Positions 24,675 through 64,000 of a stretch of 64,000 bases of DNA are shown here, one piece after another. Within the stretch, counting starts at the first letter, position 1. Each line of letters opens with the position of its first letter. The stretch comes from Vitrella brassicaformis CCMP3155 (Eukaryota; Protista; Chromerida): positions 124,001 to 188,000 of the forward strand of contig CDMY01001036.1 of the NCBI GenBank assembly GCA_001179505.1, given 5' to 3'. Under the pieces are notes generated by a model. The model saw only the letters and a list, made by a program, of their open reading frames with translations, ran no database searches and was not told where the DNA came from. Both the position numbers and the translations under genes were made by a program.

Positions 24675-26383
24675 ATGCTTCGATGCGCGCTTGTCCGTCC
24701 CGCCCAATCATCGCTTGCCACAGCAGCTCTCCAGGCATCCCAAGCGGCGTTCGTCCGTCCGATCAGCACATCCCCCTCCCTTAGGCAGTCGGCTGCAGCT
24801 GCCCAGGACTCGTCAACGACTGGTGCTCAGGGGGACAGTGATCTGCCGCCCTTCCCTCCCCCTCTCTATGACGGCGAGACAGAGGTGCTCACACCTGAGC
24901 AGCAGAAGCAGAAGGCGGAGCTCATCAAGGAGCTCACGCGGCGGCTGAGCGGCCCCCTGGCCGACGAGGAGGGCAATGTCCCGACCGGCAAGGACCGCCC
25001 CACGGCCATCGAGGTCGACGGCCCCTCCCACTTCTACGCCAACAGCCACAGGTACACTGCCTACACGAAGCTCAAGCACCGGCTGCTGACGCGCATGGGC
25101 TACCGAGTGCTGCACGTGCCGTACTTCGAGTGGCGTCGGCTGCGGGGTCAGAAGGAGAGGGAGGAGTATATGATACGGAAGCTCAAGGAGGAGCCGACCG
25201 AGTGGCTGGACCCCGAGGACGAGCAGTACTACACACAGCGCCTCACTGAGACGCTCGGGCAGAAGACCGCAGAGCTGGTGAGTGAGGACACACACGCACA
25301 CATACACAGAGCATACAGAGGACACAGAGAGGGAGGGGATCAATCCATCCATCCATCCATCGATGGATGCTGCATTTCCGGATGCTGCATTTCCCCTTTT
25401 CTACTGGTGTGTTGGTTTTGCGTTTCAGACTCCTGAGCAAAGGGCGAATATAACCCCTCCGTCTGGCCCAGCCCCCACCACGCCCGCCTCCCCACCGCCT
25501 CCCCCCCCTCCCCAAGGCGTGCAGCACCAGCACCACCAGCAGCAGCAGCAGCAGCCTGCGATGCCGCCACCGCCCACGATGCAGTCATCCTCATTCTCTC
25601 CGCCACCGCCTCCACCATCTATGGGCGACATGCCACCACCGAGAGGCCCGGCTCCAGTGCGGCCGCCAGTGGCGCCAAATACAGCTGCGGGTCAGATGCC
25701 GCCACCGCCACAGCAGCCATACATGGGGATGGGCCGGCCCCCACCACGGCCACAGATGGGCCAGCGGCCGCAGGGGGGAATGCCTTCTCCTCCTCAAGGT
25801 GGGAATGGGCATGCGCACACGAAACAGATGGCTGTCTGCTGATCACGTGTCTGTCTGTCTGTCAGGTATGCGTCCTCCTCCCCCCGCTGGCTCAGGTCCG
25901 ATGCGCCCGCAGATGACGGGCATGCCCCCTCCACCGCCACCTGGCGGCATGGGTATGGGTGCACCGCCACCACCGAGACCCAATATGGCACCACATCAAC
26001 AAGGTGAGAGAAGGGCATCAGGTGCTGCTGTGCTGGATGACCTGACCTGACTCGCCGTATATCGTATCTATCTGCATGCATTTGTATATCATGTGTGTGG
26101 TGTGTTTGCTCAGGCATGGGTGCGCCTTCGATGCCTCGGCCTCCCTCATCGCCCTTCCCACGCCCGCCGGTAAGAGACTACGACCGCCGGTTGTGCACAT
26201 GCATTAATTAAGGAGTCGAGGGGCCCTTCTCGTGGTTGCCTTTGCTTGTTGTTTCGTCAGGGTATGAGTTTCCAAGGCCGACCTCCCCCTCCCCCGCCCC
26301 CCTCAGCCCCCCCACCACCAGCCCCAGACAGCGCCGAGCCACAGACCAGTGGAGAGCAGCAGGGTGGGTCCGCAACCAACTGA
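24675..26383 (+). CDS. RAP-domain protein with predicted mitochondrial-type N-terminal presequence and long Pro-rich C-terminal tail
   Basis: [33 protein letters not shown] is Arg/Ala/Ser-rich with no acidic residues; RAP motif [33 protein letters not shown]; 4 further phase-consistent exons to TGA at 26381-26383. Confidence 0.88.
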
Positions 26384-33127: not shown

Positions 33128-36100
33128 ATGACGAGTTGCATTGTTTGGCTCCTCCTAGTCGGCCTGGTCCTGCAGCTGCGGCCGTGGAGCATCTGCAATG
33201 CCGCTCACGTCGAATGGGATTCCCACCTGATTCAGCAGCTTCACAGCAACGACACCCAGCAGCAGCTGAGTGCGCTGAGATCTATCGGCAACGACATTGC
33301 CCAGAGCAGCAACCGGAACGCCACTGCTGCTCGGTATGCCGGAGATGTCCTACGGGCAATTCTTCGTCGGCTGGCGGGAGAGCCCGGGGACAGTTCGGTG
33401 CAGCGTCAAGCAGCGACTCTGCTGGAGACACTTATGACACATGGAGGCATCCGTCTCATCGACGGAGATGCCGTGCTGCTCGTCGTGCGGCTGCTGGACC
33501 ACGAAAACCTGAGGGCAGAGCGAATTGCGACATCCATCCTAGCGGGGCAATGGGACTTGGGGAGGATGGGGCTCAACGTGATGGAGGCCTTGGCGAATTC
33601 TGGCGCAGTGGGGAAGCTCTCTCCTCTGCTCAGATCTGCCGACACAGAAGTCCGCAGCGATGCGGCCGACGCTCTGCGTGTTGTACTGACTGCTGTCAAA
33701 AGACTTGGTGGTGAGTGGGTCTCCAAAGACAGGACAGAAAAGCGGGCCCGCTGTTGGTCGTCTGTGCTGTTTGTCAGACAAGCGGGCCGACACATTACCT
33801 GCCAGTCTCGCAAGCTTCGTCGATGCGGGTTTGCTGCCGAACGCCATGGCAGCTCACCAAAACTGCAGCGTCAAGAAGCCAGATGCAGGGCCCCTGATGC
33901 TCGCTTCGTTCACTTGTGTCCTGCTCGTGTACACCGAAGACGTCGACAACGGCTATGTATGAGAATGGGGAGGGCGCTCTCAGCCATCAGTCTGTCTGTC
34001 TGTCTGTCTCCTTGTTTGTATGCATTGATTGTGCGTGCGTCAGTATGCCCACACTGTCGAACATGGATGTGTGGAGCTGAATTGTGAGGCTGTGGAGCAC
34101 TCTCAGGGTGCACGACGCGGCACGGTCCTGATGAGTGCACTGATGTACTTTACGTGGATCCTTAGGTGAACAGGGAGATAACAATCTGCTTCGAACGAAT
34201 GGCTTTGGTCCGTCTGTTTGTGTGTGTGGGCTTGGTGTAATGGCCGGTCAGAAGGAGTAGCCCTGCCTTGAGCAGGCGGGCCGCCAATATCCTCATGGCC
34301 AACGTGCGTATGAGGGTGCACAAACGCTCACCGACACATCATTGCTGTCCACTTTCTCTTGTTTCTGGCTGCAGGCCGGCTGTTTGGACGCCATCCGGCG
34401 GCTCAGAAAGCCGCCGCTCAACCGGGGTGATGACACTCATCGCATCACCGCAGCAGCTAAGAGCATCGTGGCGGATTTGTCACTGCATGTACAAATGCCC
34501 CTCCAAACTCCGCTGGATGATATTGCATGCATGAATGAATGCGGTGGCGAGTCTGTTGCCTTGTGTCCATCCATCAGGCCCGCGGCGTCTATAGTCTCCC
34601 CACGATCAACGACCTACGGAAGCTACAGGCCTACGGAAGCTACAGGATGCCTAGACGCCGTGAATTGGTACTGGGCGAGAACAGACGGTCACGGCAAGCA
34701 ATTCCTTGGTGTCGTTGGTGTCTAATCCAGTTGTCGTCTCCCTGGGTGCCGCGCGTCGGTCTCTGTTTTGCCATCCTGCTGGGCCTCTTCGTGCTGTGGC
34801 AGCTGTTCCTCCAGCCATGGCGGCGGCGATGTGAGCGGCGGCTCGCAGAGCAGCATGGGAGAGACCTGCTGGCAGCAGAGGAGGCGGAGAAGAAGAGAGG
34901 GCGCAAGAAGGCAAGACAGCCCACTTCCTCCGCCCGCCGACGGACTGTCGTTTCTCAGCCATCCTCTCCTGCTGCTGGTGGTCGTGATGGTGGCGGTGAT
35001 GCTGATGACGACGACGACGACAACGACAAAAGGCCTCTGTCGACTGCCTGTCAGACACCCCGTGAGCCGCTGTCAGATCGATCGAGCGGCATGACTGATA
35101 ATCAGGACGATCGGCGAGAGGGGACGATGAATGCTGATGACGGCCAGTGGACAGCAGCAGCCCGCAGTCGGTCCAAGAAGGCCCGGAAGGGCGGTGCCCT
35201 CGGGCGCGGTCTATCGGCCGGCCAGACGCCGTGCGAGGCTCCATCAGTGGTGGCGACTACATGGAAGAGGTCCGCGGGCCGAGGACTGGTGCTGCCGCCG
35301 TCTGCATCGCCCCCTCCGCCCCGCTCGATGCAGCCCCTCACCTCCACAGCACAGCAGTATACCCATATCAGCACAAAGCAGCGGTAAGCGAGACACAGAC
35401 GGGAGGGCGCGAGGGGACATCATGAGCCGTTGTGTGACCTTTCATGTAGTGATGTGTGGTCCTCGTCGGCGAGACCGCACAGAGGCCCTCCACCACTCGT
35501 CAAGTGTACCAAGTGAGGCTGCAGTGCAGTGGACAGGCGGCTCATCCATACCATTGGCAAATGTGGTATCCTCTCCTCGCCCCTCAGGTCTGTTTCACTC
35601 GGTGGCTGCCACGTGAGCGCCCACCGTGTTTCGGCGACAGGTGAGGCATCGAGGCGACACCAATGAGATCACAAAAAGGTCCGTGACATTGTGTGTCTCT
35701 GGCGGTCATGTCAGTTCACCTCCTGCATGCCCGCCGTCCAGCAGCTACGACGGAGCAGGGCGTCACCGGCAGCATCTGCACCACACCGTCAGACAGCAGA
35801 GTACGCAGGAAGCCAACACCCGTCAGACCCACAGAATCCGCCGGATCATCATGCTTCGTGTGCTATCTCATTCTGTCCATTCAGGTTCGGTCCGTCTGCT
35901 AACAACCAGCGCGAGAAGCATGACCCGGCTCGCCCCTCACCCTCACTCTCACCTCTGGCCGCCAACGCCAGCGCTGCCAGCAGCAGCAGTGTGGCCGTGG
36001 ACTGTCTCATCTGTTTCGGCGAGCACGGCCCTGCGTCCGTGATGTACATCCCCTGCAGACACATGCACATCTGCACCAAGTGCTACGCCGACCGCAGGAC

Positions 36101-36311
36101 CGCATGGCAGCAGAGCCTCCCCCGCATCAGGGCGGCGAATGCGAGGCGCGCCGAGGAGAACAAGGAGCGCATCAAGGAGGCCAGGGAGCCGCTGCCGATG
36201 CGGCCCGAGGAGTACCTGTGTGAGCAGTGCAAGACAGAGGTGGTGTTTGCGGGGTCGGTGGATGAGGTGGCCCGCTGGGCCGCCACCCCGTTTGTGGGAC
36301 AGCCTGGCTGA
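33128..36311 (+). CDS. Signal peptide + ARM-like repeats + single TM helix + disordered linker + C-terminal RING-HC with insertion (some internal exon boundaries uncertain)
   Basis: MTSCIVWLLLVGLVLQL signal; ARM-like SGAVGKLSPLLRSADTEVRSDAADAL and AGCLDAIRRL; TM VGLCFAILLGLFVLWQLFL followed by RRR; RING CLICF..YIPCRHMHICTKC..(about 44 aa)..LCEQC. Confidence 0.7.
34613..34646 (+). repeat. Perfect 17-bp tandem duplication inside a coding exon
   Basis: cctacggaagctacagg x2. Confidence 0.9.
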
Positions 36312-36783
36312 TGCATACATACGTAGCAGAGAGGGATTGATGTGATGGCTGGGGAGACGTAGGTGTGCATACTGGCTCTTAGTGTACAGCAAGTGGGGGC
36401 ATGGGTATTGATGTGTGCCGGACGGACGATGGGAGGGCGGAGAGACGTCGCAAAGCCTCGTTCAGTGTTCATGACGCCTCCCTCGTGTGTCTTTGTCCAA
36501 TACTCACTCGAACACACACAAATAAGTACGCCTCCCTCCCTCCCTCCCTTGCCGAATCATATATAACACCAGGCAGGCGTCCATCCATCCATCCACAAAA
36601 CGAGTTACGCAAAGTCGTGATGGTGCACATGTTATGCATCCACACACACAAAACCACACCCTCCCTACACAGTGAGTGGCTAATTAATTAAGCCCACCTC
36701 CTCCCCTATCTGTCGGCTACCCTGCTACGCTACATGAATGCTACGCTGCTACGTTGCCCTCTCGGCCCCCTCGGCCATGTCAC

Positions 36784-44456: not shown

Positions 44457-44952
44457 GTGTGTGCATGCGTGTGTCGTGATCTCTGACATCGGTTTGGTTT
44501 ACCTGCTGTTTGCATGGCGTGGGGCGGCTGGGAAGCCGTGGGTGTGTACGGGGAGACACTTGACATGAATGGTGAATGAGAATGTGGCAACTCACAGGTG
44601 CTGTATGGCTGATGGCACATGTGGCCAGTACGTTGTGTTCGGATGTCGGCGTGGGGCGGATATGATTGAGTGGTGAGAGCTCAGGTTTTTCTGTGCGTGA
44701 GGGCGGGTGTGGTGTGCGATAGACGAGACTTCAATCGATCAGTGCCGCACTTACTTCAACGCACATGGCAAATGGACTGAAGTCATCGCATGGCCAACAT
44801 CAATCAATCGCAACACAAGTTAGTTAATGTACAGAAAAAATCGAAGCGCACTGTTCAATTCAGACTCGCTCCCTCCCTCCCCCCAACCCGTTCCTTCTCC
44901 CCTTCTCCCCCTCCCTCCCCCTCTCCCCCGGGAAGCAATGCGGGCAGCACCA

Positions 44953-51684: not shown

Positions 51685-54198
51685 ATGAATGCTCCCTCTC
51701 TCTCTCTCTCTCTCTCTCTCCGTGTGGTCAGGGCTGCCCCCAGTCGTTCCAACGACATCGATGTGGACAACGACGAGGGCAATGAGTGGGAGGATGTCAA
51801 CGACGACGACGATGATGATGATGCGATGATGGACACAGAGGAGACTAACACGGCGGTCAGCAAGAAGGCCACACAGCGGGTGTCTACCAGCAGCAGCATC
51901 ACCAAGAAGGCCAAGGCCAAAGCCAAGGCGGCTGCAGCGGCCGCACGACTCACCGGTACGGAAAGCTGGATTTGGATGGATGGATGGATGGATGGATGGA
52001 TGTGTGCAGGTCGTGCGACCGGAGCTGACGACGAGTTTGACATGGAGCATTATGAGGATGAGGAAGACGACGACGACCAATACGGTCGGCGCGCAGACCA
52101 ACACAGACAGACGGGGACGGACGGTATCTCTACGTTGTGTGTGCGTATGTGTTAGGGAAGAATTTCTTCAGCGTGTTGGACTCCGATCTGCCCCTTGCAC
52201 AAAACGATCCAAACATCAGAGACGAGGTACTGATGGCTGGATCACACATGTGTGTGTGCGTGTGTCCTTACTGCACCATGTGTGGTCTGAGGCCGACAGG
52301 AGGACAGCGATGCGGACGAGGACGTGGCCATCCGGCCCAACCAAGACCTCATCCTCGTTGCCGCATCGGCGGTGGGTGCATACACACACACGAGTGGATT
52401 GGAGGCAGCGCTATGTATGTATCTACTGATGTGGTCATGTGTGCGGATGTCGTCAGGAGCGTGACTTCTCGGTGCTGGAGGTGTACGTGTACGACCCCGA
52501 CGCACTCGGCTTCTTCGTCCACCACGACATCATGGTGTGTGTCCAGCACACACACAAACATGCACCCACACGCATGCTCTCATCGTTTGATGGCATGTGT
52601 CTGCCTGCAGGTGGGTTCTTATCCGCTGTGCCTCGAGTGGCTGAGCCAGGCGCCCACCAAGGCAGCAGCATCAACCGATGGCGCACAAACAAGTAGGCAT
52701 CCAGGCCCGTCAACACCGACCCCTACCAATGTTCTGTGACGCATGAATGCCTTGGCTGCAGGCAGCAATTTGGTGGCAGTGGGGTCCTTTGAGCCGCAAA
52801 TTGAGATATGGTATGTGGTGCACAAACGATACATCCACATGTACAATCGCATTATCTGTCGCTGTCTGTGGCTGATGTGCCGTGTCCACTAGGGATCTGG
52901 ATGTGTTGAACGCGATGGAGCCACTGGCAGTGTTGGGTGGTGGGGCTACCAAGAAGAAGAAGGGCGGCGGGGCGGGGAAGGGCCACAAGGGGGCCATCAT
53001 GTGCCTCAACGCCAACAAAATGCAGAGGTGGGTTGAAGGGGCATGATAGGCGTCCGTCGATTTGTGCAAGTATGTGTGGCGTGTACGTGTGGTCACCAGG
53101 CACATCATGTGCAGTGGAAGTACCGACGAGACTGTCAAGGTGTGGGACATCGAAAAAGCGGCATGCGTGCACACATACACCCACCACACTGACAAGGTAG
53201 GTGCCCCCCTCCCCCTACACACGCGTTTCCACACGTACTCACATGCGCAAATGTGTGTGTCTGGTCAGGTCCAGTGCGTCCGTTGGCACCCGATAGAGCA
53301 GCCCGTCCTGCTGAGTGCCGCATACGACAAGTCGGTGGCCGTGCTGGACGTCCGTGTGGACCAGAGCGGCACCAAGGGCGGACAGGGCATCGTGCGCGCC
53401 CCCCTGTCAGCCGACAGCGAGTGTGCCGTGTGGGACAGGCACCACCCGACCGTGTGCATGGTACACAACCCACCCACCACACAGGCATACGTCCACCGCT
53501 ATGCGGGGGTGTTGCGCAGGTCTCGACCGAGGACGGCTTCGTGACAGCCTATGACATTCGGCAGCTCAAGAGCGACCCCATCGCAACGCAGACCACCAAG
53601 AAAGGCAGGAAGGCCGCATCTGGCGCGGGCAGTGAGCCTCTTTGGCGACTGCATGCCCATCACCAGGCCGCCTCGGGCATCACCGACGCCGCAAGTGAGT
53701 AACAACTAAGGACACACGCAATGCAAGAGCGGCCGTCCAGTGATGTCTCTGTCTTTTCTTGTGTGTCTGATTGTTGTGTGTAGTTGCTGACATGTTGGTG
53801 ACGTGCTCCGTCGACGGCGCCGCGAAAGTGTGGAATAGAGCAGGTAGGTATCCGTGCTGGCTGGCTGCGTGTATGTGTACACTGACTGAGAGTGAATGGA
53901 TAGATTTGTGTGTTGTCCTAACACAGATCCCCAGAGCGACGGCAGCCCCTCCCTCGTGTTCGAGAAGGACCTCAAAGCGGTGCGTGATGAAGACGTACAA
54001 TGCAGCCGTCCCCTGATGTGTGTGTCGACGTGTGTGTCCATCGCATCGCGCCTCCTCCTATTTTGTCAGGGGAAGCTTTTCTGCTGCAGTGCCAACAGCG
54101 ACGTGCCGTCAGTGGTGTCCTTCGGCGGCTCGGTGCCCGTCGTGTGGGACGTCAGCACAGAACAGGCAATACGAGAGGCCTTTCACATACCAGAATGA
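51438..54198 (+). CDS. PWP1: Periodic tryptophan protein 1 homolog (WD40, ribosome biogenesis/chromatin)
   Basis: N-terminus TVSCVVWVPRGVAKAVPRQYEMTDEE; acidic DDEFDMEHYED; IRPNQDLIL; LEVYVYD..FVHHDI..YPLCLEW; GSFEPQIEIW|DLDVLNAMEP; WD repeats SGSTDETVKVWD, LSAAYDKSV and TCSVDGAAKVW. Confidence 0.9.
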
Positions 54199-54459
54199 CA
54201 CACACCGTGACTGAATGAGCATGCCGCTCATCCCATGCAGACAGCCAGGCAGACAATGTCATGCAGACAACCAACTGGTTTAGCCTTTCGAGACGACTTG
54301 AGTTAGTTTTGGTTGTGAGAGTGGATGTCGTGGTGTGTGATGGGACTTGTGTTTGAGACCTTACTCAATATGGTGGAAAGCAGTCACAGAAATGATCTGA
54401 AGCTGCTATGCAGCCAAGCTGTGGGGCAGACATGAGGCCAGAACTACATAGCGAAGCTC

Positions 54460-54632
54460 TGTCCCTGCACTCAGTGGCCAGGTCAGCAAAACGCCTCTGC
54501 TCATCAGGAGATTTACACGTCGAGATTTTGACGAGACGCGACGTCTTTTTCTTTTTTCCTTTTCGCCTTCCGCAGCGTTTTCTTTCATTCGTATTTCCCA
54601 AGCTGTTCCCCTTCTCCGCCTTCCGCTCTCGT
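54460..54632 (+). repeat. Dispersed repeat R1, copy a (non-coding, pyrimidine-rich)
   Basis: tgtccctgc(a)ctcagtggccaggtcagc..tttacacgtcgagatt..cttttttccttttc..ttcccaag.tgtt..cttctccgcctt aligns by eye with 56421-56596. Confidence 0.8.
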
Positions 54633-55054
54633 GCTTCGTGTGGATTTTGAGGGCTACTGCAGTTTCTCATGCTTAGTTGCAAGACGTAAGCGAGTGACGC
54701 GTACAGCGATGGATACACCAAGTGTCACTTTGTGTGTGGTTTCTGCATAGACAACTTGACTGCACAAGCCTCTCTTGCCAATCCGCGCGATTCCTAGGTG
54801 TAGACCTGGAAGAGAAGAGGACGATGCCGTCAGCACTCCGAGTCAGCGTCAAGTTCTTGGATGCAGCCCTCGACGACATTCGTAAGCTTACTGCAGCACC
54901 TTGATCATGTGTGTCAACTCGGGGATGAATACGCTTTTGGTGCACTTTCTCCTCTTGTGCAGTCCACCCCACGGTGCAGACGGAGAGGGAGGCCGCTAAG
55001 CTCAGGGCGTTTCATGCGTTCCTGAGCTTGACGCCACCCGAGCAGCCGCAGTTC

Positions 55055-55156
55055 CCCGTCGTGACGAAACCCAAGCTTGGCGCACAGACGGTCGATGACG
55101 GCCACACAGCTGACGACGACCACGGCCAGACGGCCAAGGACGAGGTTGAGGGCGGG
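55055..55156 (+). repeat. Inverted copy of part of an N-terminal exon of the DEAD-box/KH gene (source about 22981-23094)
   Basis: cccgtcgtgacgaaa..ggcgca.agacggtcgatgac..ggccacacagctgacgac..ggccaaggacgagg..gggcggg is shared; PVVTKPKLGAQTVDDGHTADD vs [25 protein letters not shown]. Confidence 0.8.
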
Positions 55157-55203
55157 TCTAACTTATCGGGATGAGGTAGTTCGTTGCCGGGGGCGTTGTC
55201 ATC

Positions 55204-56972
55204 ATGGACGAAAAAACGCATAGGCCTCCGCGCGAGTGCGCGACCTTCTCACGCCCAGAGAGGCCCCAGCTCCGATTCGTCTTTCTTCGTGAGGGCTCCG
55301 GTATCGCAGAGTTCACAGCCCCCGTGGCCCGCCTGAGTTTCAGGTTTGACCCGCGGTGTTACGTGAGTGCATTCATGGTGCAGTGGCAGCGAGAGGAGGT
55401 GCTTCATGACAAAGCTGTGTTGATTAGTGGAGACATCGGGCTGTTTCGTCGGTTGGAAGCGCACCTGGTGTACGGAGAACCGCTCAACGAGGGCGACACA
55501 CGAATTCTCCGCGATGAGCAGATGTTCCCCAACTTCATCGTATTCTCCAATACAGGTGAGGAAGGGCAAGGTGGGCAGAGAGGCTGGAGGGATTGACGCA
55601 CGGATGCAGATGCCTTTCTGTCATTCAGGATGTGCCAGCGTAGATCATGGCGTAGATGCGGGCTCCGCAGGAGATGGCGGCGCACAAGCAGCAGCAGGCG
55701 CCTCAGACGAGGCCCCGGTGGGTCACCGTGTTTGGTTTGAATACTGTGATTGTGCACAAATGGAGGAAATGGAGGCGTTGTCGTGTGTTTCAGGGTAACG
55801 CCGGCGCGGCGAGCGGCTCGAGGGAGCGTGGCGGAGAGGTGTGTGGCACGAATGGCAACGCTGGTGCGCCGCCGCCCGCGCCGGCCTTCCCCCAGAGTCA
55901 CCCACCCGCTTCCCCTTCCCTGAGTCAACAACCCACCGACATGGATGACGGTAGCCAGCCTGACGCCCCTCTGGCCCTGCCGGACGCCCCTCTGGCCCTG
56001 CCGCCCTTTCCCTTCCCCCATCTGGCCCTGCCGCCCTTTCCCTTCCCCCATCTGGCCCTGCCGTCGCGATCGGCCGCGCCCCCGCCGTCCCGTCGCCCCC
56101 CCGCCCTCAACTTGAGGGACAAGCAAGAGACCGGCCAGCCGGCAGCGGCAGCGGCGGCGGCAGCGGCTGTCCCGCCGCCTGCCTTTGAGCCGATCGTTCA
56201 TGTGAAGAGGGAGGACGAGAGCGAGATGGGCCAGGAGGACGCATACAGCATGCACGCAGAGGCGGCGGCCGGCATGCAGGAGGGGTATGAGGGCTATGGG
56301 GACCACGGAGGGATGGGAGAGGGGGAGGGGGAGGAGTGGGCTGTTGCATGTGGCGAGGGCGGTGACGTCGGTGTTGGAGTTGACGGATTGGGTGAGGGTG
56401 CGGTTGAGGGCGGGGGCGTGTGTCCCTGCTCAGTGGCCAGGTCAGCGAAAAAAAAACTCGCTTCGTCGTGGAAGTTTACACGTCGAGATTACTTTCCTGA
56501 GAGACGGCGACTGTTTTTTCTTTTTTTCCTTTTCACCTTCCAGTGCGTTTGTGGTTTCCCAAGGTGTTTCTCTTCTCCGCTTTGTCCGCCCTCGTCGATG
56601 AGTGTTTGTTCATCCCCTCAGCTGCTGGACGTCCGCCGCTGTACGTGCCGGCACCGGCGTATCCGCCACACCCGGCACCGGCGGCGCATTTGGCACTGCG
56701 GCCGCGCGGCATCCTTCCAGAAGGTACGTCACACACCATTGCAGGCACTGCTCACATGCATTGCTGCTGGTCGGTGCAGGCGCAGCTCCCCCAAGTCGGC
56801 TGGCTTCATCCAGCACGCGGCGGTAGGAGATCTCAAGAGTACTAGACGTGAGTGGGCAAACATTGTTGTGTGTATTGTGACATTCGCAGGTGACCACTGT
56901 CGCAGCTGGTGGACAGGTGAGCAGACACAAGGGCAGGAAAGGGTCTTAGTCAGGTCTATTGCTATCTTATGA
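55204..56972 (+). CDS. Possible chimeric 3-exon ORF running from a novel N-terminus through captured DEAD-box-gene sequence, R1b and out-of-frame RING14 sequence
   Basis: MDEK..FSNT |gtgagg..cattcag| GCASVDHG..EAP |gtgggt..tttcag| GNAGAASG..; frame open to 56972; C-terminal half looks non-natural. Confidence 0.35.
55961..56064 (+). repeat. In-frame tandem repeats: 21-bp unit x2 then 30-bp unit x2
   Basis: gacgcccctctggccctgccg x2 and ccctttcccttcccccatctggccctgccg x2 (PDAPLAL / PPFPFPHLAL). Confidence 0.85.
56318..56422 (+). repeat. Second inverted fragment of the same DEAD-box exon (source about 22850-22975)
   Basis: gggctgttgcatgtggcgagggcggtgac..ggtgttggagttgacggattgggtgaggg is shared, with a 24-nt in-frame deletion in the copy. 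Confidence 0.85.
56421..56596 (+). repeat. Dispersed repeat R1, copy b
   Basis: Aligns by eye with 54460-54632. Confidence 0.8.
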
Positions 56973-57079
56973 ATCCATTTTTGCAGCAACCGGCCGCTCG
57001 GCCTCGGCCCCCCGCGCCACAACCACACCCACAACCGCAGCCACTTCCACAGACCCACCCGCCCAGGTCAGCTGCATAG
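56598..57079 (+). pseudogene. Inverted genomic copy of RING14 exons 2-4 with introns (source 45807-46309)
   Basis: Near-continuous identity from atgagtgt.tgttcatcccctcagctgctggacgtccg to ..cccacccgcccaggtcagctgcatag, including intron sequence. Confidence 0.9.
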
Positions 57080-57440
57080 GCTCAACCACTTTGCCTACCA
57101 GGTCATTACCTGCACCACGGCAGAAAGAGAGCCGTCATAATGATGCACACACACATATCCTGGTTGCAGCAACTGCTTCTCGAGTCGATTGCGATTGTAG
57201 TTGCGCCGAAGCGGGTTGGTTTCTTCATGCTGACTGGCATGCCCAGCGACTGGATCAATTGGACTGGATTCCACAACCACGACGACCGCAAGCAGCCCCT
57301 CTACAGAGGTCCCTGATGTAGATTGATTGTTTGAGAGGAAGTGATATGTGTGTGTGTGTCTTCACTTCTTCTCAGAAATTGAAAGAAGGATGATCACCAC
57401 AACGAGTGTGTCCGTTGAAGTCCAAGATTGGCGTGACTGA
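57080..57440 (+). pseudogene. 5'-truncated fragment of an AMSH/STAMBP-like JAMM deubiquitinase gene (last 3 exons)
   Basis: LNHFAYQ |intron| QLLLESIAIVVAPKRVGFFMLTGMPSDWINWTGFHNHDDRKQPLYR |intron| EIERRMITTTSVSVEVQDWRD* parallels the AMSH C-terminus (..SYQMMLPESVAIVCSPK..GFFKLT..GFHPH..PLF..DLR*); the catalytic HxH motif is absent. Confidence 0.7.
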
Positions 57441-58655
57441 CTGGCTCCCCTCGTCTCTTTGTAGCCTGCCTGGTCGCATGTTTGTATTGATCGACAAGAT
57501 GCACGCAGCACTCGGGTAATTGGTGGAGAGAGGAATACGGGTGCTTGGATGCATCACCATACTCTCTGCGTGGGCCATTCATGTGCAGGATGAGAAAGGT
57601 CGGTTGCTGCGCGATGTGGACAAGTCGACGCCCTTTCAACCGAATGCGCCGCTCTTAAGGAGGAAGTCGACAAGTGAGAACAAATCACAGGACCCAAATC
57701 GCACATCGTACATACGGAGGTGCAGGTCTCGTGAGCGTGAGGCGGCCATCAGTGAGCTGCAGGCCGCTGTGGCCGAGAAGGACACGCAGATGGTGGAGAT
57801 GAAGGAACAATTCGTACGAAAGACAAGACAGACACACACGAGATGCGTCGATGTCTCCGGCCATTCATGAATGCTGCTGCTTGCCCTCAGGACCTCCTAC
57901 AAGTCCATTACAATGACTACGTCATGCTCGCCCGTCGTCAACAAGACAAAATCCAGGTGAGACAAGGAAGCGTCAACGGTATACGGGACTGGTCGATGTC
58001 TACGTGTCTGTCTGTCTGTCTGTCTGTCTGTCTCGATAAGGGCATCGAGACAGAGAACCGGGCGTTAAAGGAGCGCCTCGTATGCAGGAAGAGACACACA
58101 TTCACATGATGCCTTTGACTTTTTTCGGGCTGCTTTGCGCTGCAGGACATGCTGCAAGGGCACTACAATGAATTGCTCATCTGCATCGGAGCCCCACTGC
58201 TTTGTGCTCCAACGCCCACCACGCCCGCCTCCCCACTTCCGCCATCCCCTCCGCAGCAAGAGCAGCAGCGAGCCCGTTACGCCGCATGTCTTCTTTTGCT
58301 GTCTGTTGTCTCAAGCAGATAATTTTGGTGCTGACGCGTTGCCCAGGATGCCATCGACACTCAGACGGTGAGCCGTGGCGCATCCAACCGGCCGCGTGTG
58401 CTCTTCTGCATTGCCTTCGGTGTGTCTCTGTCAGGAGAGCATTGGTGAGACGTTGAGGAAGGTGCGGGGCCTTGTCAACCAGTTTGCAGGGTTCCAGGCA
58501 CAGGTCAGACGCACACCAGATAGCATCACCTGGACTTCTCTCTCACTTGCTTTGCGTGTCCAGGCGCCAGAGTTGTTGGGTTTTCTGACTTCTAAGGTGC
58601 GCATCACACCCACTCGGCCCCCAAAGTCCGTGCATTCATGTTTTGCTCCACGGAC

Positions 58656-58678
58656 TTCAGGGTTTCAGGGTTTCAGGG
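58656..58678 (+). repeat. Short telomere-like tandem repeat (TTTCAGGG, about 3 copies)
   Basis: ttcaggg tttcaggg tttcaggg. Confidence 0.6.
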
Positions 58679-59875
58679 AAGGACGCCCTTCCCAAATTTA
58701 CGCATCAAGGGAGACCGCCAGAGGTAAGCCCCACGCAGGCAGCTCTCAAGGCTCAATGAGGCCCATGGAAGGAGGGAGAAAGAGCCCTAAGCGCAGCAAG
58801 ACACATGAGGACAGGTGGGAACGATGTCATGCATCTGTAGTGATGCCATGTCAGATCTCCTTTCTTCTTTGATGTTTTCTGTGGGTTCTCAGTGTGAGGA
58901 TGCGTCTGAACGACGCCAAGGCGTTCCCGAGCCTGTTTTCATCGGCCAGTGGCGCCACCACTCGCAACAGCAGCAGCGAGGATATCGACTTGCAGCCCGC
59001 CCGTATTGCCCAGGCCGCTCACGCGATGCTGTGCTCCATCGACATCGCAGACGCAAACACAGCTGGTGATGGTGCCGGTGATGGGAGGGGGAGTGACTGG
59101 GCAGGGGGTAGCGGTGGGCAGAGGGCGGAAGAGTGTGCGGCCCAGGCTGGCGCCGACATGGATGCGGACATGGAGGGACCATCCAAGGGCGCCGACCAAC
59201 ACCAGAAGCTCAAACATCGCAAAAGAAAGGTGCACAGCCACCATGCCAGCCAACCCCATTGTATTTGTCGCTGTATGTGGATGTGCTGCGGGATCAGGCC
59301 AAGGACACCTCAGCTTCATCCAAGATACCCGCACTCGTCAAGCTCTGCCTAGACAAAAGATATGTGTCTACATGTGTGCCATCTATCCACATACCCTCTC
59401 TCTCTGTATGTGTGTGCCTTGGTTTAGCTGTCGCGCCAATTTGAGGAGATCCTCGAGCCCCCAGCTCCCAAGAAGCCACGCCAGAAGAAGGCCCCCCACA
59501 CAGACCACTCGGAGGTCGGACCGACTCCCCACCCCCCCTCCCCCTACACACACACACATACAGACGAAGAAATCAACCCCACTCGGTTTGCCCCCTCTCT
59601 CTCTCTCTGTGTCTGTGTGTGTGTGTGTGTGTGTGGCATGGACAGGGGACAAGACCGTCATTGTCAGAGATAGACCACACACACACGCACTCAAGGACGT
59701 TCGTGACTCTCTCTCTCTCTCTGTATGTGTGTGTGTGCGTGTCTGCACAGAGAAAGTACCATCAGCTCAAGGGCGAGGCTAACGGCACACGGTCCTTTGA
59801 GGACCAGCTGACCGCCCTCCACCAGGAACTGGCAGCGTCTCGCGAGCTGACCGAGACCAAACAGAAGCAGGTGCG

Positions 59876-60175
59876 NNNNNNNNNNNNNNNNNNNNNNNNN
59901 NNNNNNNNNNNNNNNNNNNNNNNNNNNNNNNNNNNNNNNNNNNNNNNNNNNNNNNNNNNNNNNNNNNNNNNNNNNNNNNNNNNNNNNNNNNNNNNNNNNN
60001 NNNNNNNNNNNNNNNNNNNNNNNNNNNNNNNNNNNNNNNNNNNNNNNNNNNNNNNNNNNNNNNNNNNNNNNNNNNNNNNNNNNNNNNNNNNNNNNNNNNN
60101 NNNNNNNNNNNNNNNNNNNNNNNNNNNNNNNNNNNNNNNNNNNNNNNNNNNNNNNNNNNNNNNNNNNNNNNNNNN
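59876..60175. other. Assembly gap (300 N)
   Basis: N run followed by poly-G. Confidence 0.99.
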
Positions 60176-62216
60176 GGGGGGGGGGTGAGAGAGGAGAGTG
60201 AGGTAGCTGGTAGATAGCTAGCACCTCTTCACCAATTTCTCGAGGCGCAGACAGACGTTGAGCGGGCCCCTGTCTTGCCGATAGGGGCTGCCTTGCACAC
60301 GCCCCTGTCGGATGTTCATGAGGGTCACACCCAGACAGAGAGACAGACAGACAGACAGGACAGGACAGGACAGGCGGCCATGCTTGCTGCAGGGATGCAT
60401 CTCCCCTTATTCATCTGTGTCATTGTGCTCATCTACCTCTGTCTCTCTGTGCCTGATGTGTCTGATGTGTGTGTGTGTCTGTACCGTGGCCATACAGCCG
60501 CGCAGGACACGATGACGAAGCAGCTGATGCAGAAGGAGGCGCAAGTCAAGTGAGACCATCCAGACACTGCATCCCAACCACCCATGTATGTTCCCACACC
60601 TGTCTGCATGTCTGTCTGTGTTGTGTTTGTCAATTGTCTGACCGCCAGCAGGAGGAGCCACGGTGCTCAGCCACCCGCGTGTGTCATATTAGTTGCTCTG
60701 TGCGGCGTGTGGCTGCCCTCCGGAAGCCATAGGCCACTCCCCGACGCAGCTACCTCGGCCAAGCATCGCTGCCTACACTTTATATCCTGTTGTCCTGTCG
60801 TCGTTGTGTCTGTAGCCATTTCATGCAGGAGCAGCGCCCCCAGTGGGCCGATATCTCTCTGTCCCTCAGCGAGTTGGACGTCAGTCAAAGTTGAGGTCAA
60901 GGAGAACGAGATTCGGTGACCGGGTACATAAAAGAAATATGCTCAATAACAAACAGACGTGAGTGACCACCGCACACATATACACACGTGTCCGTGAATT
61001 TGTCGTCTCGTTCTATGTCCGTGTCCACACAGGCAGATTGATGCCTTGCAAGGCTGCTGACGAGCAGGCCGCCAGGCTGAATGACATCAACGCCCAGCTC
61101 AAGAAACTCACCGAGAACTCGCAGGTAGACGAGCAGGGTGACACCACAGACAGTCGCGTGTTGATGTGCGGATATAATTTGATGTGTGGATGGATGGCCA
61201 TGGGTGTGTGCAGGAGTTGAACGGCCAGACCAACGAGTTGACCAAGGATGCTAGAGGACAACTGCAGGTGAGTGAGCGACACACATCCACAACCCCCCAT
61301 CAACACACAGATTGATGTCATTCACCGCTTTGTTGAGTTTGCCGATCCGGCCACACATGACGAGGACGACAAGGCGTATCGGGAGTGCCTGAAGAATCGC
61401 GCGGGCTCGCTGTTTGTCGTTTCGGGGGAATCCAGCCAGCCGTAGGCTTCAACAGTCATCTTGCCTACGGTCCTCGTGTTTGTTTCCAAGAAGAAGGCCA
61501 AAGCAGACTGGACCCATCTGAGGCCTGTGTTGCCTATTCTCATGGAGCTCTTTCAAAGATCCTTTGCCAGCTGGAGACGCTCGTGATTGCGGTAAGGAGG
61601 GCGGGGGGCGGGGGAAGGGAGCGCAGGCTAACTTCATGAATCCGATCTCATGATTGTTATGATGCATGTGTATGTCCCTGGATGGACGATTTGTCGCAGT
61701 TCAAGACGGCCTGTAAGGCTGGAGATATGCTGGAAGCCTTCAAGATCTACACGCAGATCAAGGAGCAGCTGGTGGGTGTATACGTGGCTGTCTGTCCGTC
61801 TGTTTGTCTGTCTGTCTGTCTGTCTATGTGCACGGATACATATCGACAAGCTCAGACACATCCATCTATTGTCCTTCTTCTCTCTGTGTGTGCCCTTTTG
61901 CAGGCCATCGTGTTCCGTCTCAAGACGCTGCAAACCTCTTGGGGCCATCACGTAAGGACTGAAAGACAGAGCAAGCACCCATGCACATTCTGTCTGTCCG
62001 TCTGTTTGTCTGTCTGTCTATGTGCACACACCTTCAGTCTCACGCCGTGCTTCAAGATCTCATCGACAGACTTGAGAGCATGCGCAACTCCTTGTTGTTG
62101 TGGGAAGAGAGATGGAAAAAAGCGGTGAAATTGATGAATCGCGACCAAAAACTTATGCTTGCACGTCAGGTGAGACGATAAGATGACGAGCAGATGGCGC
62201 AGTGTAACTTTCTCTT

Positions 62217-62562
62217 CTCCAGATGGGCATGGCGCAAGGCCTCCAGCAGGGCATCGCCCAGGGGTGGGACCAGGCCACGCGATGCGTGGTCTGTTTCGCC
62301 GCCCCGAGGGACACCGTCACCCGACCATGCGTAAGCAGTGACAGACACTAGCCACTGGATGTACTCAGAAGTTGTTCCTCACTTGACCAATGTTTTCACT
62401 GTGTGTGTGTGTGCAGGGCCACATGTGCATGCGCCAGGGCTGCGCTGCCCATATTGCTCTCTGGCCCCATCTGCCAAGGCCCAAACAACCCGAATGCCCC
62501 GCTGCCCTCAAACGCCCCGACCTTCCTCTCGTGATAGTGCTGCCCGTGTTGCTTCCTGGGGG
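62217..62562 (+). pseudogene. Inverted genomic copy of the RING14 3' end (RING exons, intron, 3' flank; source 44926-45272), degraded
   Basis: MGMAQGLQQGIAQGWDQATRCVVCFAAPRDTVTRPC |same intron| GHMCMRQGC; Cys-to-Arg change and a +1 frameshift before the last Cys pair. Confidence 0.9.
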
Positions 62563-62616
62563 TGTATTCTCACGACTTATATCATCTTCGAACGCTGAGC
62601 GAGAGCGACACAGAAA

Positions 62617-64000
62617 ATGTCGCAGCGGCCAGCGTCTCATCCTCGGCTTCATCTGGGGCAGACTGACCACCAGCAAAGGTGAGTACATGTAGAGAGAGCA
62701 ATCAAGAGAGTCAGAGACGCCCAAACAAGACAGCTGCAGCGGCCGCAAGGGCAAGAAGATCACTCCATCAGTCAAACCTTCCCTCCCCTCGGTGTCTGCA
62801 TCCACCATGTTGTCATCTGCAGAGCCTCGAGACCGAATACCAGGAGAATGGCTACTGTTCGTCAGCTGCAAGAGGCGCTGCGTGCCAAGGACGGCGAGAT
62901 ACAGGTGCTCAAGAGAGTGGATGTGGACAGGTGAGAAGTGGTGGAGCGGTAATGAATGTATGACTTTGAGGGTCTTCCTGTCTATCTGTCTTTGCCAGGA
63001 GAAAACCGCACGCAGAAGGAACGACTCGTAGGAAAGAACAAGAGACACTACACACACACACACACACCAACCCCACTCGTCCATCCATCCATCCATCCGT
63101 CTATCTGTCTGTCTGTCTGTCTGTCTGTGTGTCAGGACCATCTCGAGTCTTGAGCGTTCGACGAGAGGCATTTTGGCGATGACCTGCAGGCCAAGGACCA
63201 GTGCATCAAGCTGGCGGACAACGGCCCTCGAGCAGCCACCCCACCGCCCCCTGTCAACATGCACATGAGCCTGTCCCTGATCGGCAAGGCCCTTCTGGCC
63301 GAAGCGCAACGGCTTTCCTTGTTGGTGGCTGGGGTTGAGAAGAAGCAGAAAAGCCTGAGACAGAAGCGCACGGTGGGCAACGCGCGAAGTACACAGATGT
63401 GGGCGGGGGAGACACACTGTGATGCATGTGCGACAGGAGGAGATCTTCCAGCTGCGCCATGACCTCGCAATGGCGGACCACCCTCTTCGGCAGACAGCGC
63501 ACCCGCGACACGTTGTTGGAGTCCTCATGTAATGGCCCGTGTTTCTTCCCTCTCTGTTTGTGTCTCAGCAGAAAGAGTTGTCCGAGTCAACCAACAACTG
63601 CATTCGTCTGCAAGAGGAGAACAAGCGCATTCGGCTGGACCTCGAGAGGACGCACCACGACCTCGGCACCAGCCACGAGAAGATGGCCACACGGGTTGAG
63701 ACTATCGACAAGATGCACGCAGCGCTCGTGGTCAGAGAGTCAGGGAGGGAGGGAGGGAGGGAGAGAGGACCATGCTTGGGTGGATTGCCATGTTCTGCCT
63801 GCGTGTGCAGGAGGACAACGGTCGGTTGCTGGGTGAGGTGGACAAGACCGCACCTCGACAAGCCGCCAAAGCATGGCCACACGGGTCGAGAACGTCGACA
63901 AGATGCACAAGTGAGAAAACCAACATATGCACTCAACGATGAGATGGTGTCCGTGCACGCAGGAATGACGGCAAGAGCCCGCAGTCAATTGAGGGGCGTG
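62617..64000 (+). pseudogene. Coiled-coil family copy B, running off the window end; in-frame TGA at 63151 and a frameshift near 63850
   Basis: MSQRPASH.. | ..TVRQLQEALRAKDGEIQVLKR | ENRTQKERL | DHLES* then frame continues | KELSESTNNCIRLQEENKR..MATRVETIDKMHAALV; 63704-63918 is homologous to 57490-57685. Confidence 0.6.

What the first reader, a model, noticed from the sequence alone, without database searches (positions are those of the whole stretch)
54460..62562. About 8-kb mosaic of captured, intron-containing gene fragments from neighbouring and distant genes (Pack-element-like exon-shuffling hotspot)
Seen, all on +, in order: R1a; DEAD-box exon fragment 1; 1.16-kb unrelated insert; DEAD-box fragment 2; R1b; RING14 exons 2-4 with introns; AMSH 3' exons; decayed coiled-coil exons; RING14 RING exons. 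Junctions are abrupt, some with short microhomology (gtgt at about 56420, atgagtgt at 56598). The in-window donors lie about 10-33 kb away on the opposite strand and are intact. Introns are retained, so copying was DNA-level, not retroposition. The region also breaks the head-to-head gene pattern. Known: Pack-MULEs and Helitrons capture multi-gene fragments; template-switch repair (FoSTeS/MMBIR) gives local templated insertions. Inference: an active gene-fragment-capture or new-gene-birth process, which I have not seen described in this lineage.
Basis: partly seen in the sequence, partly recalled or inferred. Interest (0 to 1): 0.85.

Follow-up and report, generated by a model that had tools for sequence, protein, structure and literature searches.

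The report
Gene-fragment patchwork locus in Vitrella
An 8-kb stretch of the alga Vitrella brassicaformis is a real patchwork of DNA-level copies of pieces of at least 12 other genes, all pointing the same way; it was most likely built by repeated faulty break repair, not by a jumping element, and most pieces look like decaying junk even though one stretch is annotated as a gene.

Summary
The genome is Vitrella brassicaformis CCMP3155. Window 54460-62562 holds intron-containing partial copies of at least 12 genes: four donors lie on the same 220-kb scaffold and eight on other scaffolds.

- **Insert:** the "1.16-kb unrelated insert" is itself three donor pieces.
- **AMSH piece:** it is real. It is an old copy of a JAMM gene on scaffold C897.
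- **Junctions:** independent read sets, including a sediment metagenome, reproduce those junctions that were laid.
- **Assembly gap:** it falls inside an intron of a decayed coiled-coil paralogue. Both flanks are colinear with scaffold C282, but no contig bridges the gap.
- **Transposon signs:** none found. There are no terminal inverted repeats, no second copy of any junction, and no similarity to the genome's Helitron loci.
- **Fragment ages:** they differ (P=2e-5).
- **Donor location:** donors are strongly local (P=4e-8).
- **Orientation:** all nine fragments that can be oriented are sense on + (P about 0.002).
- **Decay:** the copied RING has lost zinc ligands, and one copied exon has dN/dS of about 1.

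An annotated 498-aa chimeric model (P0001) spans five donors but reads the RING14 exons out of frame.

Best reading: multi-event accretion of fragments by repair, like a "tinkering locus". Expression is untested. The scan has noted other gene-fragment patchworks elsewhere in this genome.

The parts
54460..54632 (+). R1a: T-rich 173-bp direct repeat. Its only other copy in the genome is R1b.
54633..55047 (.). Segment with no other copy in the genome at DNA level.
55048..55156 (+). DEAD-box gene fragment 1. Matches window 23098-22981 (-) and is about equally close to paralogue C259:95362-95478.
55169..55758 (+). Copy of the 5' end of the C33 orphan gene (protein P0002, 276 aa): 35 bp upstream of the ATG, exon 1, intron 1, exon 2 and the start of intron 2. 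82% identity with gaps. Exon 1 dN/dS is 1.02; the indels seen in the protein alignment leave its 117-codon frame open.
55770..55846 (+). 77-bp copy of C775:2356-2280 (88%). The annotation uses it as the start of P0001 exon 3. Donor strand is undetermined.
55848..56334 (+). Copy of the low-complexity linker of the C398 multi-BRCT protein (P0003, 999 aa; residues about 485-720), in the parental frame. Contains tandem 21- and 30-bp repeats.
56309..56423 (+). DEAD-box fragment 2. Matches window 22988-22849 (-) and resumes within about 9 bp of where fragment 1 stopped. It overlaps the C398 piece in a 16-26-bp G-rich tract.
56421..56595 (+). R1b, the second copy of R1. It lies in intron 3 of the annotated model P0001.
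56598..57082 (+). RING14 5' piece: from the tail of intron 1 through four exons and three introns, to 16 bp into the next intron (window 46310-45804, -). Substitution identity is 95.5% in exons and 93.3% in introns. The parental frame is still open in the first of these four exons (checked there only).
57083..57434 (+). Old copy of the last exon(s) and 3' UTR of an AMSH-like JAMM/MPN gene on C897 (about 168.2-168.6 kb, -). Equals P0001 exon 8 in the parental frame, with an earlier stop.
57497..58252 (+). Direct copy (88%) of exons and introns of the downstream neighbour coiled-coil gene (C1036:188295-189023, 6.8 kb away).
58316..58640 (+). Copy of C117:127399-127794 (71% with gaps). Donor strand is undetermined.
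58791..58977 (+). Copy of C436:203431-203224 (81%). The donor frame shows dN/dS of 0.19, so the copy is sense.
58978..59648 (.). Segment with no detectable relative at DNA or protein level. Ends in CT/GT microsatellites.
59649..59872 (+). In-situ paralogue of the C282 coiled-coil gene (C282:85943-86091 joined to 86784-86871). A 693-bp internal deletion sits at a 6-9-bp microhomology (59785-59794).
59876..60175 (.). Assembly gap: a 300-N placeholder inside an intron of the coiled-coil paralogue. Not bridged by any contig that was laid.
60176..60482 (+). Continuation of the C282-like block (C282:86918-87272, 75%). Colinearity resumes at 62792 and runs into the neighbour gene.
60483..61307 (.). 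Segment unique in the genome, with short coiled-coil-like open frames.
61308..61405 (+). 98-bp piece of a CNOT1 (CAF1-binding domain) gene, C908:224600-224503. Starts at an acceptor CAG; 22 of 32 residues are kept.
61555..62019 (+). Exon end, intron and next exon of a gene at C1036:30072-30856 (-), 88%. Its first 72 bp also match C503. Ends in a (TGTC)n microsatellite.
62218..62562 (+). RING14 3' piece (window 45271-44925, -): end of the long exon, an intron, the RING exon and 32 bp of 3' UTR. The RING is inactivated: ligand Cys to Arg, plus a 1-bp insertion before the last CPxC.
55204..57316 (+). Publicly annotated 8-exon gene model P0001 (498 aa, 'unnamed protein product', Vitrella brassicaformis CCMP3155). 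It chains the C33, C775, C398, DEAD, RING14 (non-parental frame) and AMSH pieces.

Best explanation
The locus is a sink for gene fragments that formed without a transposon.

**Proposed history**
- A dispersed duplicate of a two-gene block (the 3' part of a coiled-coil gene plus its neighbour, paralogous to C282:85.9-90 kb) lost function on its coiled-coil side.
- Over an extended period this dispensable DNA, and the DNA upstream of it, took up short DNA-level copies (77-760 bp) of parts of at least 11 other genes.
- Each uptake is best explained by repair of a chromosome break that copied an ectopic template and then sealed by end joining. That means synthesis-dependent strand annealing (SDSA) or template switching, sometimes over several templates in one event. 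An example is C33, C775 and C398 dropped together into the older DEAD-box piece.

**Present state**
- The copies then decay about neutrally.
- The chained open frame annotated as P0001 is most likely an ab initio by-product, or at most a proto-gene.

**Shown**
- The mosaic itself.
- DNA-level copying.
- Single-copy junctions.
- The nesting.
- Unequal fragment ages.
- The bias to local donors.
- The sense orientation.
- The decay.

**Inferred**
- The repair mechanism.
- Why all fragments are sense.
For: **The mosaic is real**
- The mosaic and its donors.
- Contigs from three isolate data sets and one 2025 sediment metagenome lie with no differences (X1; X2, X4 and X9 cover fewer) across these junctions: 56421, 56580, 57082, 57497, 58252/58316, 58640, 58791-58977, 60482, 61308-61405, 61555, 62019 and 62218. 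In addition, 92% of sampled 31-mers of 54300-59875 occur in run X1.

**Copying was at DNA level**
- Introns are retained at 91-96% substitution identity.
- There are no poly(A) tails.

**No sign of a mobile element**
- R1 and four of the spacer segments searched occur once in the genome, and no donor-donor junction recurs elsewhere.
- The only inverted repeats are microsatellites.
- There are no Helitron-related sequences.

**Signatures of repair**
- Donor-to-donor junctions carry 1-, 11- and 12-bp fillers, or overlaps of 3 bp and 16-26 bp.
- The coiled-coil remnant has a deletion at a microhomology.

**More than one event**
- Divergence is heterogeneous: chi-square P=2e-5; RING5 versus RING3 P=0.007; the AMSH piece is 63-80% identical yet abuts a 94.6% piece.

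**Donors are local**
- 4 of 12 donors lie on the same 220-kb scaffold (P=4e-8). This is typical of an ectopic template search.

**The pieces are decaying**
- Two to three of the RING's zinc ligands are lost.
- C33 exon 1 has dN/dS of 1.02.
- RING exons and introns have diverged about equally.
- P0001 reads the RING14 exons out of the parental frame.

**The locus stands out from its surroundings**
- It has at least 14 duplicated spots in 8 kb, against 3 in a 16-kb control.
- The genome is compact, with a median intergenic distance of 92 bp and only 1.5 Mb of transposons (PMC4501334).
Against: - All nine fragments whose donor strand can be determined are sense on + (P about 0.002-0.004). Plain break repair does not predict this. 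It needs an added assumption: selection, or coupling to transcription.
- Indels inside C33 exon 1 are in-frame, and a 498-aa spliced ORF with canonical GT/AG sites exists. This hints at some maintenance of the ORF.
- The sequence before each insertion is unknown, so microhomology can be judged at only about 6 junctions.
- No RNA data were reachable, so non-function is inferred from sequence alone.
- The gap is unbridged.
Confidence: 0.55

Rival explanations
1. Capture by a transposon: a Helitron or a Pack-type TIR element picked up the fragments and carried them here.
For: - The genome encodes Helitron Rep-like proteins at 8 or more loci, some with long open frames, and 18 kb is annotated as Helitron.
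- Multi-gene fragments that keep their introns and share one orientation are the classic picture of maize Helitrons (my own knowledge; PMC3288121 was listed but not read).
- The nested 1.15-kb insert begins with TC.
Against: - There are no terminal inverted repeats.
- No Rep match lies on this scaffold.
- There is no similarity to 11 Rep loci.
- The one family end I could derive is absent.
- Every junction is single-copy.
- The fragments are interleaved with an in-situ paralogous block.
- Fragment ages are heterogeneous.
- No CTRR end or hairpin could be assigned.
Confidence: 0.1
2. One catastrophic replication event (MMBIR/FoSTeS, like chromoanasynthesis) with serial template switches made the whole patchwork at once.
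For: - Copying returns to the same template: DEAD1 to DEAD2 resumes within about 9 bp, and RING14 resumes 533 bp further along.
- Junctions have short fillers and microhomologies.
- Donors are local.
Against: - Divergence from the donors ranges from about 3.5% to over 20% of substitutions, and to about 37% for the AMSH piece. Neighbouring pieces differ significantly.
- The younger insert lies inside the older DEAD piece.
Confidence: 0.1
3. Selected exon shuffling: the locus encodes one or more functional new chimeric genes (P0001 and perhaps a coiled-coil fusion), and selection kept only the sense-oriented pieces.
For: - The public model P0001 has 8 exons with canonical splice sites.
- Orientation is sense in 9 of 9 fragments.
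- Parental frames are kept in the C33, C398, DEAD2 and AMSH parts.
- Indels in C33 exon 1 are in-frame.
Against: - dN/dS is 1.02 in the best-sampled exon.
- RING14 exons are read out of frame in P0001, and the copied RING is dead.
- P0001 has no Pfam domain and no relatives beyond its two donors among 1.8 billion representative proteins.
- No RNA evidence was reachable.
Confidence: 0.12
4. RNA-templated repair: unspliced nascent transcripts of other genes were reverse-copied into breaks. This would give the uniform sense orientation.
For: - Sense orientation holds even though the DNA orientation relative to the chromosome is mixed: the DEAD, RING14 and 30-kb donors are inverted, while the neighbour gene is direct.
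- The C33 piece starts only 35 bp upstream of the ATG, and the RING14 piece ends 32 bp after the stop codon. Both ends are near transcript ends.
Against: - There are no poly(A) tracts.
- Most ends are internal to genes.
- Introns are fully retained.
- The mechanism has little precedent for tracts of 100-750 bp.
- RNA templating alone does not fix the orientation of an insertion.
Confidence: 0.05
5. Regulatory pseudogene cluster: the locus is transcribed from the opposite strand into antisense RNA or endo-siRNAs against its dozen or so parent genes. This would be analogous to one-directional piRNA clusters or pseudogene-derived siRNAs.
For: - Fragment orientation is uniform.
- Piwi-domain (Argonaute) genes are present at 4 or more loci.
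- The parent genes include RNA-metabolism genes (DEAD-box/KH, CNOT1).
Against: - There are no small-RNA or RNA data.
- Identity to the parents (63-95%) is low for siRNA targeting over most of the tracts.
- No promoter evidence exists.
Confidence: 0.05
6. Assembly artefact: velvet or SSPACE chimerism.
For: - This is a short-read assembly with a gap inside the region (PMC4501334).
- The 88 bp next to the gap are 97% identical to C282.
Against: - The copies differ from their donors by 5-37%, so donor reads cannot have built them.
- Contigs assembled independently from several data sets, including a metagenome, span the junctions exactly.
Confidence: 0.03

Closest known systems
'Tinkering loci' of Drosophila (Weisman, bioRxiv 2026, doi 10.64898/2026.08.09.743762)
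   Same: - Kilobase-scale loci with an unusual density of dispersed gene fragments from many parents.
- Fragments share flanking non-coding sequence with the parental exons, which points to DNA-level ectopic recombination rather than retroposition.
- Unrelated genes are juxtaposed into composite open frames.
   Different: - In Drosophila, transposons are enriched at the fragments and are thought to supply the shared homology. Here no transposon sequence and no microsatellite enrichment is found at the junctions.
- Re-transcription, a defining property in Drosophila, could not be tested here.
- The strict sense orientation seen here is not among the features I read in that paper.
Pack-MULEs, Pack-CACTA elements and gene-capturing Helitrons of plants
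   Same: - Chimeras of fragments from several genes, with introns retained.
- For Helitrons, a common fragment orientation.
- Chimeric transcripts or gene models.
   Different: - No terminal inverted repeats, no target-site duplication, no element termini and no additional copies.
- The fragments are interleaved with resident paralogous DNA.
- They were acquired at different times.
Filler-DNA or templated insertions at repaired double-strand breaks, and MMBIR/FoSTeS complex rearrangements (e.g. PMC8421209; listed, only its abstract seen)
   Same: - Short fillers and microhomologies at junctions.
- Several templates joined in one insertion.
- Return to the original template.
- Preference for nearby templates.
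   Different: - The tracts here (77-760 bp) are longer than typical polymerase-theta insertions.
- Many events have piled up at one locus over evolutionary time.
- The orientation is uniform.
Primate pericentromeric and subtelomeric duplication mosaics (my own knowledge)
   Same: - Patchworks of intron-containing gene segments copied from many loci.
- They sit next to multi-copy families and yield chimeric transcripts and pseudogenes.
   Different: - The segments there are tens of kilobases long and lie in repeat-rich genomes. Here they are sub-kilobase pieces in a compact, transposon-poor protist genome.
- No telomere repeat is seen at the scaffold end.

Membership tests
Pack-MULE / Pack-TIR element | Terminal inverted repeats bounding the captured fragments | tested here: not met
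   Of the 93 inverted pairs found in 53800-63200 (seed 9), the 25 longest that were shown are microsatellite arms or short weak matches; none brackets the mosaic.
Pack-MULE / Pack-TIR element | Mobility: further copies, or the same junctions elsewhere in the genome | tested here: not met
   Own-genome DNA searches find each piece only at its donor. R1 and the spacer segments occur only here.
Pack-MULE / Pack-TIR element | Target-site duplication | tested here: inconclusive
   No element ends could be defined. The nested insert sits in a G-rich tract, where a duplication cannot be read.
Helitron (gene-capturing) | A Rep/helicase source in the genome and sequence kinship with it | tested here: not met
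   PF14214 matches occur at 8 or more loci but none on scaffold C1036. BLASTN of the mosaic against 11 Rep loci gives only microsatellite hits.
Helitron (gene-capturing) | 5'-TC and 3'-CTRR termini with a subterminal hairpin, inserted at an AT site | not testable with these tools
The one palindromic family end I could derive is absent from the window.
Helitron (gene-capturing) | Captured fragments share one orientation | tested here: met
   9 of 9 fragments that can be oriented are sense on +.
Tinkering locus (Weisman 2026) | Local density of dispersed gene fragments far above background | tested here: met
   At least 14 donor-derived pieces in 8 kb, against 3 duplicated spots in a 16.2-kb control.
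Tinkering locus (Weisman 2026) | Fragments share non-coding flanks with the parental exons (DNA-level ectopic recombination) | tested here: met
   Introns and UTR flanks were copied along with the exons.
Tinkering locus (Weisman 2026) | Transposon sequences enriched at the fragments | tested here: not met
   No transposon-related sequence was found. Simple repeats lie near only 4 of 28 junction ends (P=0.36).
Tinkering locus (Weisman 2026) | Fragments are re-transcribed | not testable with these tools
   No RNA run holds the stretch. The runs that were laid behave like DNA, with no GT..AG joints.
Processed retrocopies | Intron loss and a poly(A) tail | tested here: not met
   Introns are retained in the RING14, C33, 30-kb and neighbour-gene pieces, and there are no poly(A) tracts.
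Single-event MMBIR / chromoanasynthesis | All segments are of one age | tested here: not met
   Divergence is heterogeneous, P=2e-5, and an old AMSH piece sits next to a young RING14 piece.

The most novel reading that the evidence does not exclude
Vitrella has a transposon-independent, orientation-aware process that accretes fragments. Under this reading, pieces of many genes are copied, always in the sense direction, into a few 'workshop' loci, either through a transcription-coupled repair route or through RNAi-based purging of antisense insertions. This would yield newborn chimeric genes such as P0001. It would also extend the very recent 'tinkering locus' concept from flies to a compact protist genome related to apicomplexan parasites. 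Earlier notes of this scan report other gene-fragment patchworks in the same genome, which fits a genome-wide process.
Probability: 0.15. Interest if true: 0.8.

Novelty: new member of a known kind. Interest (0 to 1): 0.5.

Why it matters
Chromerids are the free-living sister group of apicomplexan parasites. Their genome paper (PMC4501334) describes a compact, transposon-poor Vitrella genome, and in the parts I searched and read it does not mention gene-fragment patchworks.

This locus shows that DNA-level shuffling of exon-intron pieces from a dozen genes can occur without a recognisable mobile element. It also shows that automatic annotation turns the result into a 'protein'.

If loci like this are common in Vitrella, they would be a tractable system for three questions:
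- how composite genes arise;
- how ectopic repair chooses its templates;
- why the fragments end up co-oriented.

If not, the practical lesson is to treat models such as P0001 as probable pseudogene chimeras.

Tried and rejected
- **Terminal inverted repeats:** a search of 53.8-63.2 kb found only microsatellite arms.
- **Helitron tests:**
  - No Rep family hit lies on this scaffold.
  - BLASTN against 11 Rep loci gave nothing.
  - One derived family end is absent from the window.
- **Microsatellites as recombination anchors:** 4 of 28 junction ends lie near a simple repeat, P=0.36. Rejected.
- **Recurrent seam motif**, as reported for other Vitrella patchworks: no repeated 11-13-mers occur apart from an internal tandem repeat, and CATTTTATAT appears only as two 1-mismatch hits, one inside the mosaic at 60776-60785.
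- **JAB family search of the genome**: it missed the C897 AMSH-like gene, whose domain is split by introns. A protein search with P0001 exon 8 found it.
- **My provisional label 'AMSH' for 57497-58252:** it was wrong. That piece copies the downstream coiled-coil neighbour. No Pfam family except S10 peptidase was found further downstream.
- **Protein-level searches of spacers 58978-59349 and 60963-61217:** no significant relatives.
- **DEAD fragment:** it does not extend upstream of about 55038.
- **The look-up of encoding contigs for P0001:** nothing on record.
- **RNA evidence:**
  - No RNA run holds the stretch.
  - The laid contigs show no canonical spliced joints.
  - The joint 57079 to 62218 (ends GC..TC, 30-nt side) is best read as cross-mapping of the donor RING14 contig.
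- **Second gene model at 57.5-62.6 kb:** I did not search for one, because the length filter of the protein search made a hit unlikely.

Full report
**Identity of the genome.**
- The assembly has 72,700,666 bases in 1064 scaffolds.
- That is exactly the figure published for Vitrella brassicaformis CCMP3155 (PMC4501334).
- The only database protein that matches the locus is named as from that strain.
- The window is scaffold C1036:124001-188000.
- The paper reports a compact genome: median intergenic distance of 92 bp, 1.5 Mb of transposons and 18 kb annotated as Helitron.
- The assembly came from velvet plus SSPACE, short reads only.

**Checking the observation.**
- Searching the whole genome with the region shows much more.
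- The '1.16-kb unrelated insert' that splits the DEAD-box piece is three further donor pieces:

| Window | Donor | Identity |
|---|---|---|
| 55169-55758 | C33:115306-115906 | 82% |
| 55770-55846 | C775 | 88% |
| 55848-56334 | C398:9480-10107 | 88-90% |

- They are joined by fillers of 12, 11 and 1 bp, and by a 16-26-bp G-rich overlap back into the DEAD-box piece.
- Downstream of the RING14 5' piece come these pieces:
  - An old copy of the 3' end of an AMSH-like JAMM gene on C897. It was found only at protein level, and the donor's upstream exon carries the JAB domain.
  - A copy of the downstream neighbour gene (57497-58252, 88%).
  - Pieces of C117 and C436.
  - Remnants of a coiled-coil gene.
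  - A 98-bp CNOT1 piece (Pfam CNOT1_CAF1_bind on the donor).
  - A 465-bp exon-intron-exon piece from C1036:30 kb.
  - The RING14 RING exons.
- The donor proteins P0002 (276-aa orphan) and P0003 (999-aa multi-BRCT protein) are annotated and complete. The mosaic is therefore the recipient.
- A 16.2-kb control stretch of the same window has only three duplicated spots.

**The gap.**
- All four N runs in the window are exactly 300 long.
- The left flank (59785-59872) ends just after a GT splice donor and matches C282:86784-86871.
- The right flank (60176-60482) matches C282:86918-87272, which is only 46 bp further on in C282.
- The gap therefore lies in an intron of a coiled-coil paralogue, and no reading frame crosses it.
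- No contig from four public runs bridges it. Continuity is supported only by this colinearity and by the scaffold.

**Is the assembly real?**
- Contigs assembled independently from run X1 lie with no differences across 56300-56636, 57050-57575, 57546-57996, 58140-58379, 58355-59520, 60381-61599 and 61835-62299. X2 and X4, from two other studies, cover most of the same spans.
- These spans cover almost every junction right of 56300.
- A 2025 marine-sediment metagenome (X9) carries several of them, including 62101-62286 across the start of the RING14 3' piece.
- The copies differ from their donors by 5% or more, so donor reads cannot have produced them.
However, 92% of sampled 31-mers of 54300-59875 occur in X1.
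- The runs behave like DNA: depth is even and there are no GT..AG joints. I therefore have no expression data.

**Anatomy and history.**
- Window 59649 to about 64570 is colinear with C282:85943-89991, which holds the 3' part of a coiled-coil gene plus the next gene.
- The coiled-coil pieces are therefore a resident paralogue, not captures. The paralogue has a 693-bp deletion at a 6-9-bp microhomology.
- Other pieces lie inside and upstream of this block.
- Nesting is clear. The DEAD-box donor sequence is contiguous, and the C33/C775/C398 composite sits inside it with at most about 9 bp lost.
- Substitution-only divergence ranges from 3.5% to 19%, and the heterogeneity is significant (P=2e-5).
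- The two RING14 pieces differ from each other: 5.4% against 10.5%, P=0.007.
- The AMSH piece (63-80% identical) directly abuts the young RING14 piece.
- This argues for several events. C33 and C398 have equal dS (0.18 and 0.18), which fits their arriving together.

**Mechanism tests.**
- There are no terminal inverted repeats.
- R1a and R1b occur nowhere else.
- The spacer segments are unique.
- No junction recurs elsewhere.
- The genome does have Helitron Rep genes, but none on this scaffold. The mosaic shares nothing with 11 Rep loci or with one family end I could derive.
- Simple repeats are not enriched at junction ends.
- No seam motif recurs.
- Four of twelve donors lie on the same 220-kb scaffold (P=4e-8).
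- Short fillers, microhomologies, insertions built from several templates, and nearby templates are what ectopic break repair with template switching and end joining produces.
- The one feature this does not explain is orientation. All nine pieces whose donor strand can be determined are sense on + (P about 0.002). They are DEAD-box, C33, C398, RING14, AMSH-like, the neighbour gene, C436, CNOT1 and the 30-kb gene.
- Their DNA orientation along the chromosome is mixed, so the common factor is the transcriptional sense.
- Selection could account for this, either through exonisation or by avoiding antisense RNA. Piwi-domain genes exist. A transcription-coupled route is also possible. Neither could be tested.

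**Function.**
- The public annotation has an 8-exon, 498-aa model, P0001, at 55204-57316.
- It uses the C33 exons, the C775 mini-exon, and the C398 and DEAD pieces as one exon. It then uses the RING14 exons in a non-parental frame and the AMSH last exon in its parental frame.
- It has no Pfam domain. Among 1.8 billion representative proteins its only relatives are the two donors.
- C33 exon 1 has dN/dS of 1.02, although its indels are in-frame.
- RING14 exons and introns have diverged about equally.
- The copied RING has lost its fifth zinc ligand (Cys to Arg). A 1-bp insertion removes the last Cys pair.
- I read the locus as mostly decaying copies, with P0001 at best a proto-gene.

**Comparison with known systems.**
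- The closest description is the 'tinkering locus' of Drosophila. It shares the dense clusters of dispersed gene fragments, the DNA-level ectopic recombination and the composite proto-genes.
- The density and shared-flank features are met here. Transposon enrichment is not. Re-transcription is untested.
- Pack-MULE and Helitron membership fails on every structural feature I could test, except common orientation.
- The locus also lies about 10 kb from a cluster of an orphan family (2.2-kb units, at least 40 copies) that fills the scaffold tail. The neighbourhood is therefore prone to duplication. No telomere repeats were seen.
- Earlier notes of this scan describe other gene-fragment patchworks elsewhere in this genome. 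These are unchecked leads, but they suggest the process is not confined to this locus.

**Verdict.**
- The transposon-capture reading is not supported.
- Stepwise, repair-mediated accretion of fragments is the best explanation (confidence 0.55).
- The co-orientation remains unexplained.

Noticed in passing
C1036:195088-219410 (L006, L025-L027), beyond the window end: The scaffold tail is filled with direct and inverted copies (74-92% identical) of a unit of about 2.2 kb that has ORFs of about 400 aa and no Pfam domain. The family has at least 40 copies genome-wide, in clusters on C1036 (46-49 kb, 97-111 kb, 195-219 kb), C309, C13 and C138. There is no telomere repeat at the scaffold end.
   Followed up: partly
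window about 35945-36343: A segment of about 300-400 bp has 20 or more copies across many scaffolds (66-95% identical).
   Followed up: no
window 21894-25574 versus C259:94467-97345 and C327:105386-106237: The 5' part of the DEAD-box gene and the start of its head-to-head neighbour have a 2.8-kb paralogous copy on C259 (78%) and a shorter one on C327 (81%). The true source of the DEAD-box pieces in the mosaic is therefore ambiguous.
   Followed up: partly
C1036:194357-194599 (L006 6357-6599): Another small patch lies 6-10 kb beyond the window. It has a 74% match to window 44605-44818, just 3' of RING14. That match overlaps an inverted 168-bp copy (91%) of C1036:189412-189578.
   Followed up: no
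C503:29074-29171 (L011 4974-5071): C503 shares only a 98-bp exon-end piece (88%) with the gene at C1036:30 kb, so stray gene fragments also exist elsewhere. L011 additionally has internal repeats.
   Followed up: no
L023 about 9759 and L024 about 9195 (C239, C314): A three-copy Helitron-Rep-bearing family of 8 kb or more (88-92% identical) ends in a 13-nt-stem palindrome, not in a canonical TC or CTRR terminus.
   Followed up: partly
window 60482 to 61201: All four runs that were laid report a joint from 60482 to 61201 with 10 other letters in between. Its depth is similar to that of the main contig, although a contig also covers 60381-61599 without a break. It could be a GT-repeat alignment artefact or a 718-bp deletion variant. 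Unresolved.
   Followed up: no
window 57588-57667: Runs X2, X4 and X9 carry contigs with three substitutions (57656, 57666, 57667). X2 and X9 also show a 33-bp skip (57588 to 57622) that X1 lacks. This is either cross-mapping of the 88%-identical donor gene or an allelic form.
   Followed up: no
runs X9, X10, X12, X13: Marine-sediment metagenomes from 2023-2025 contain this stretch at near identity (up to 31% of its sampled words). The organism, or a very close relative, therefore occurs in such sediments.
   Followed up: no
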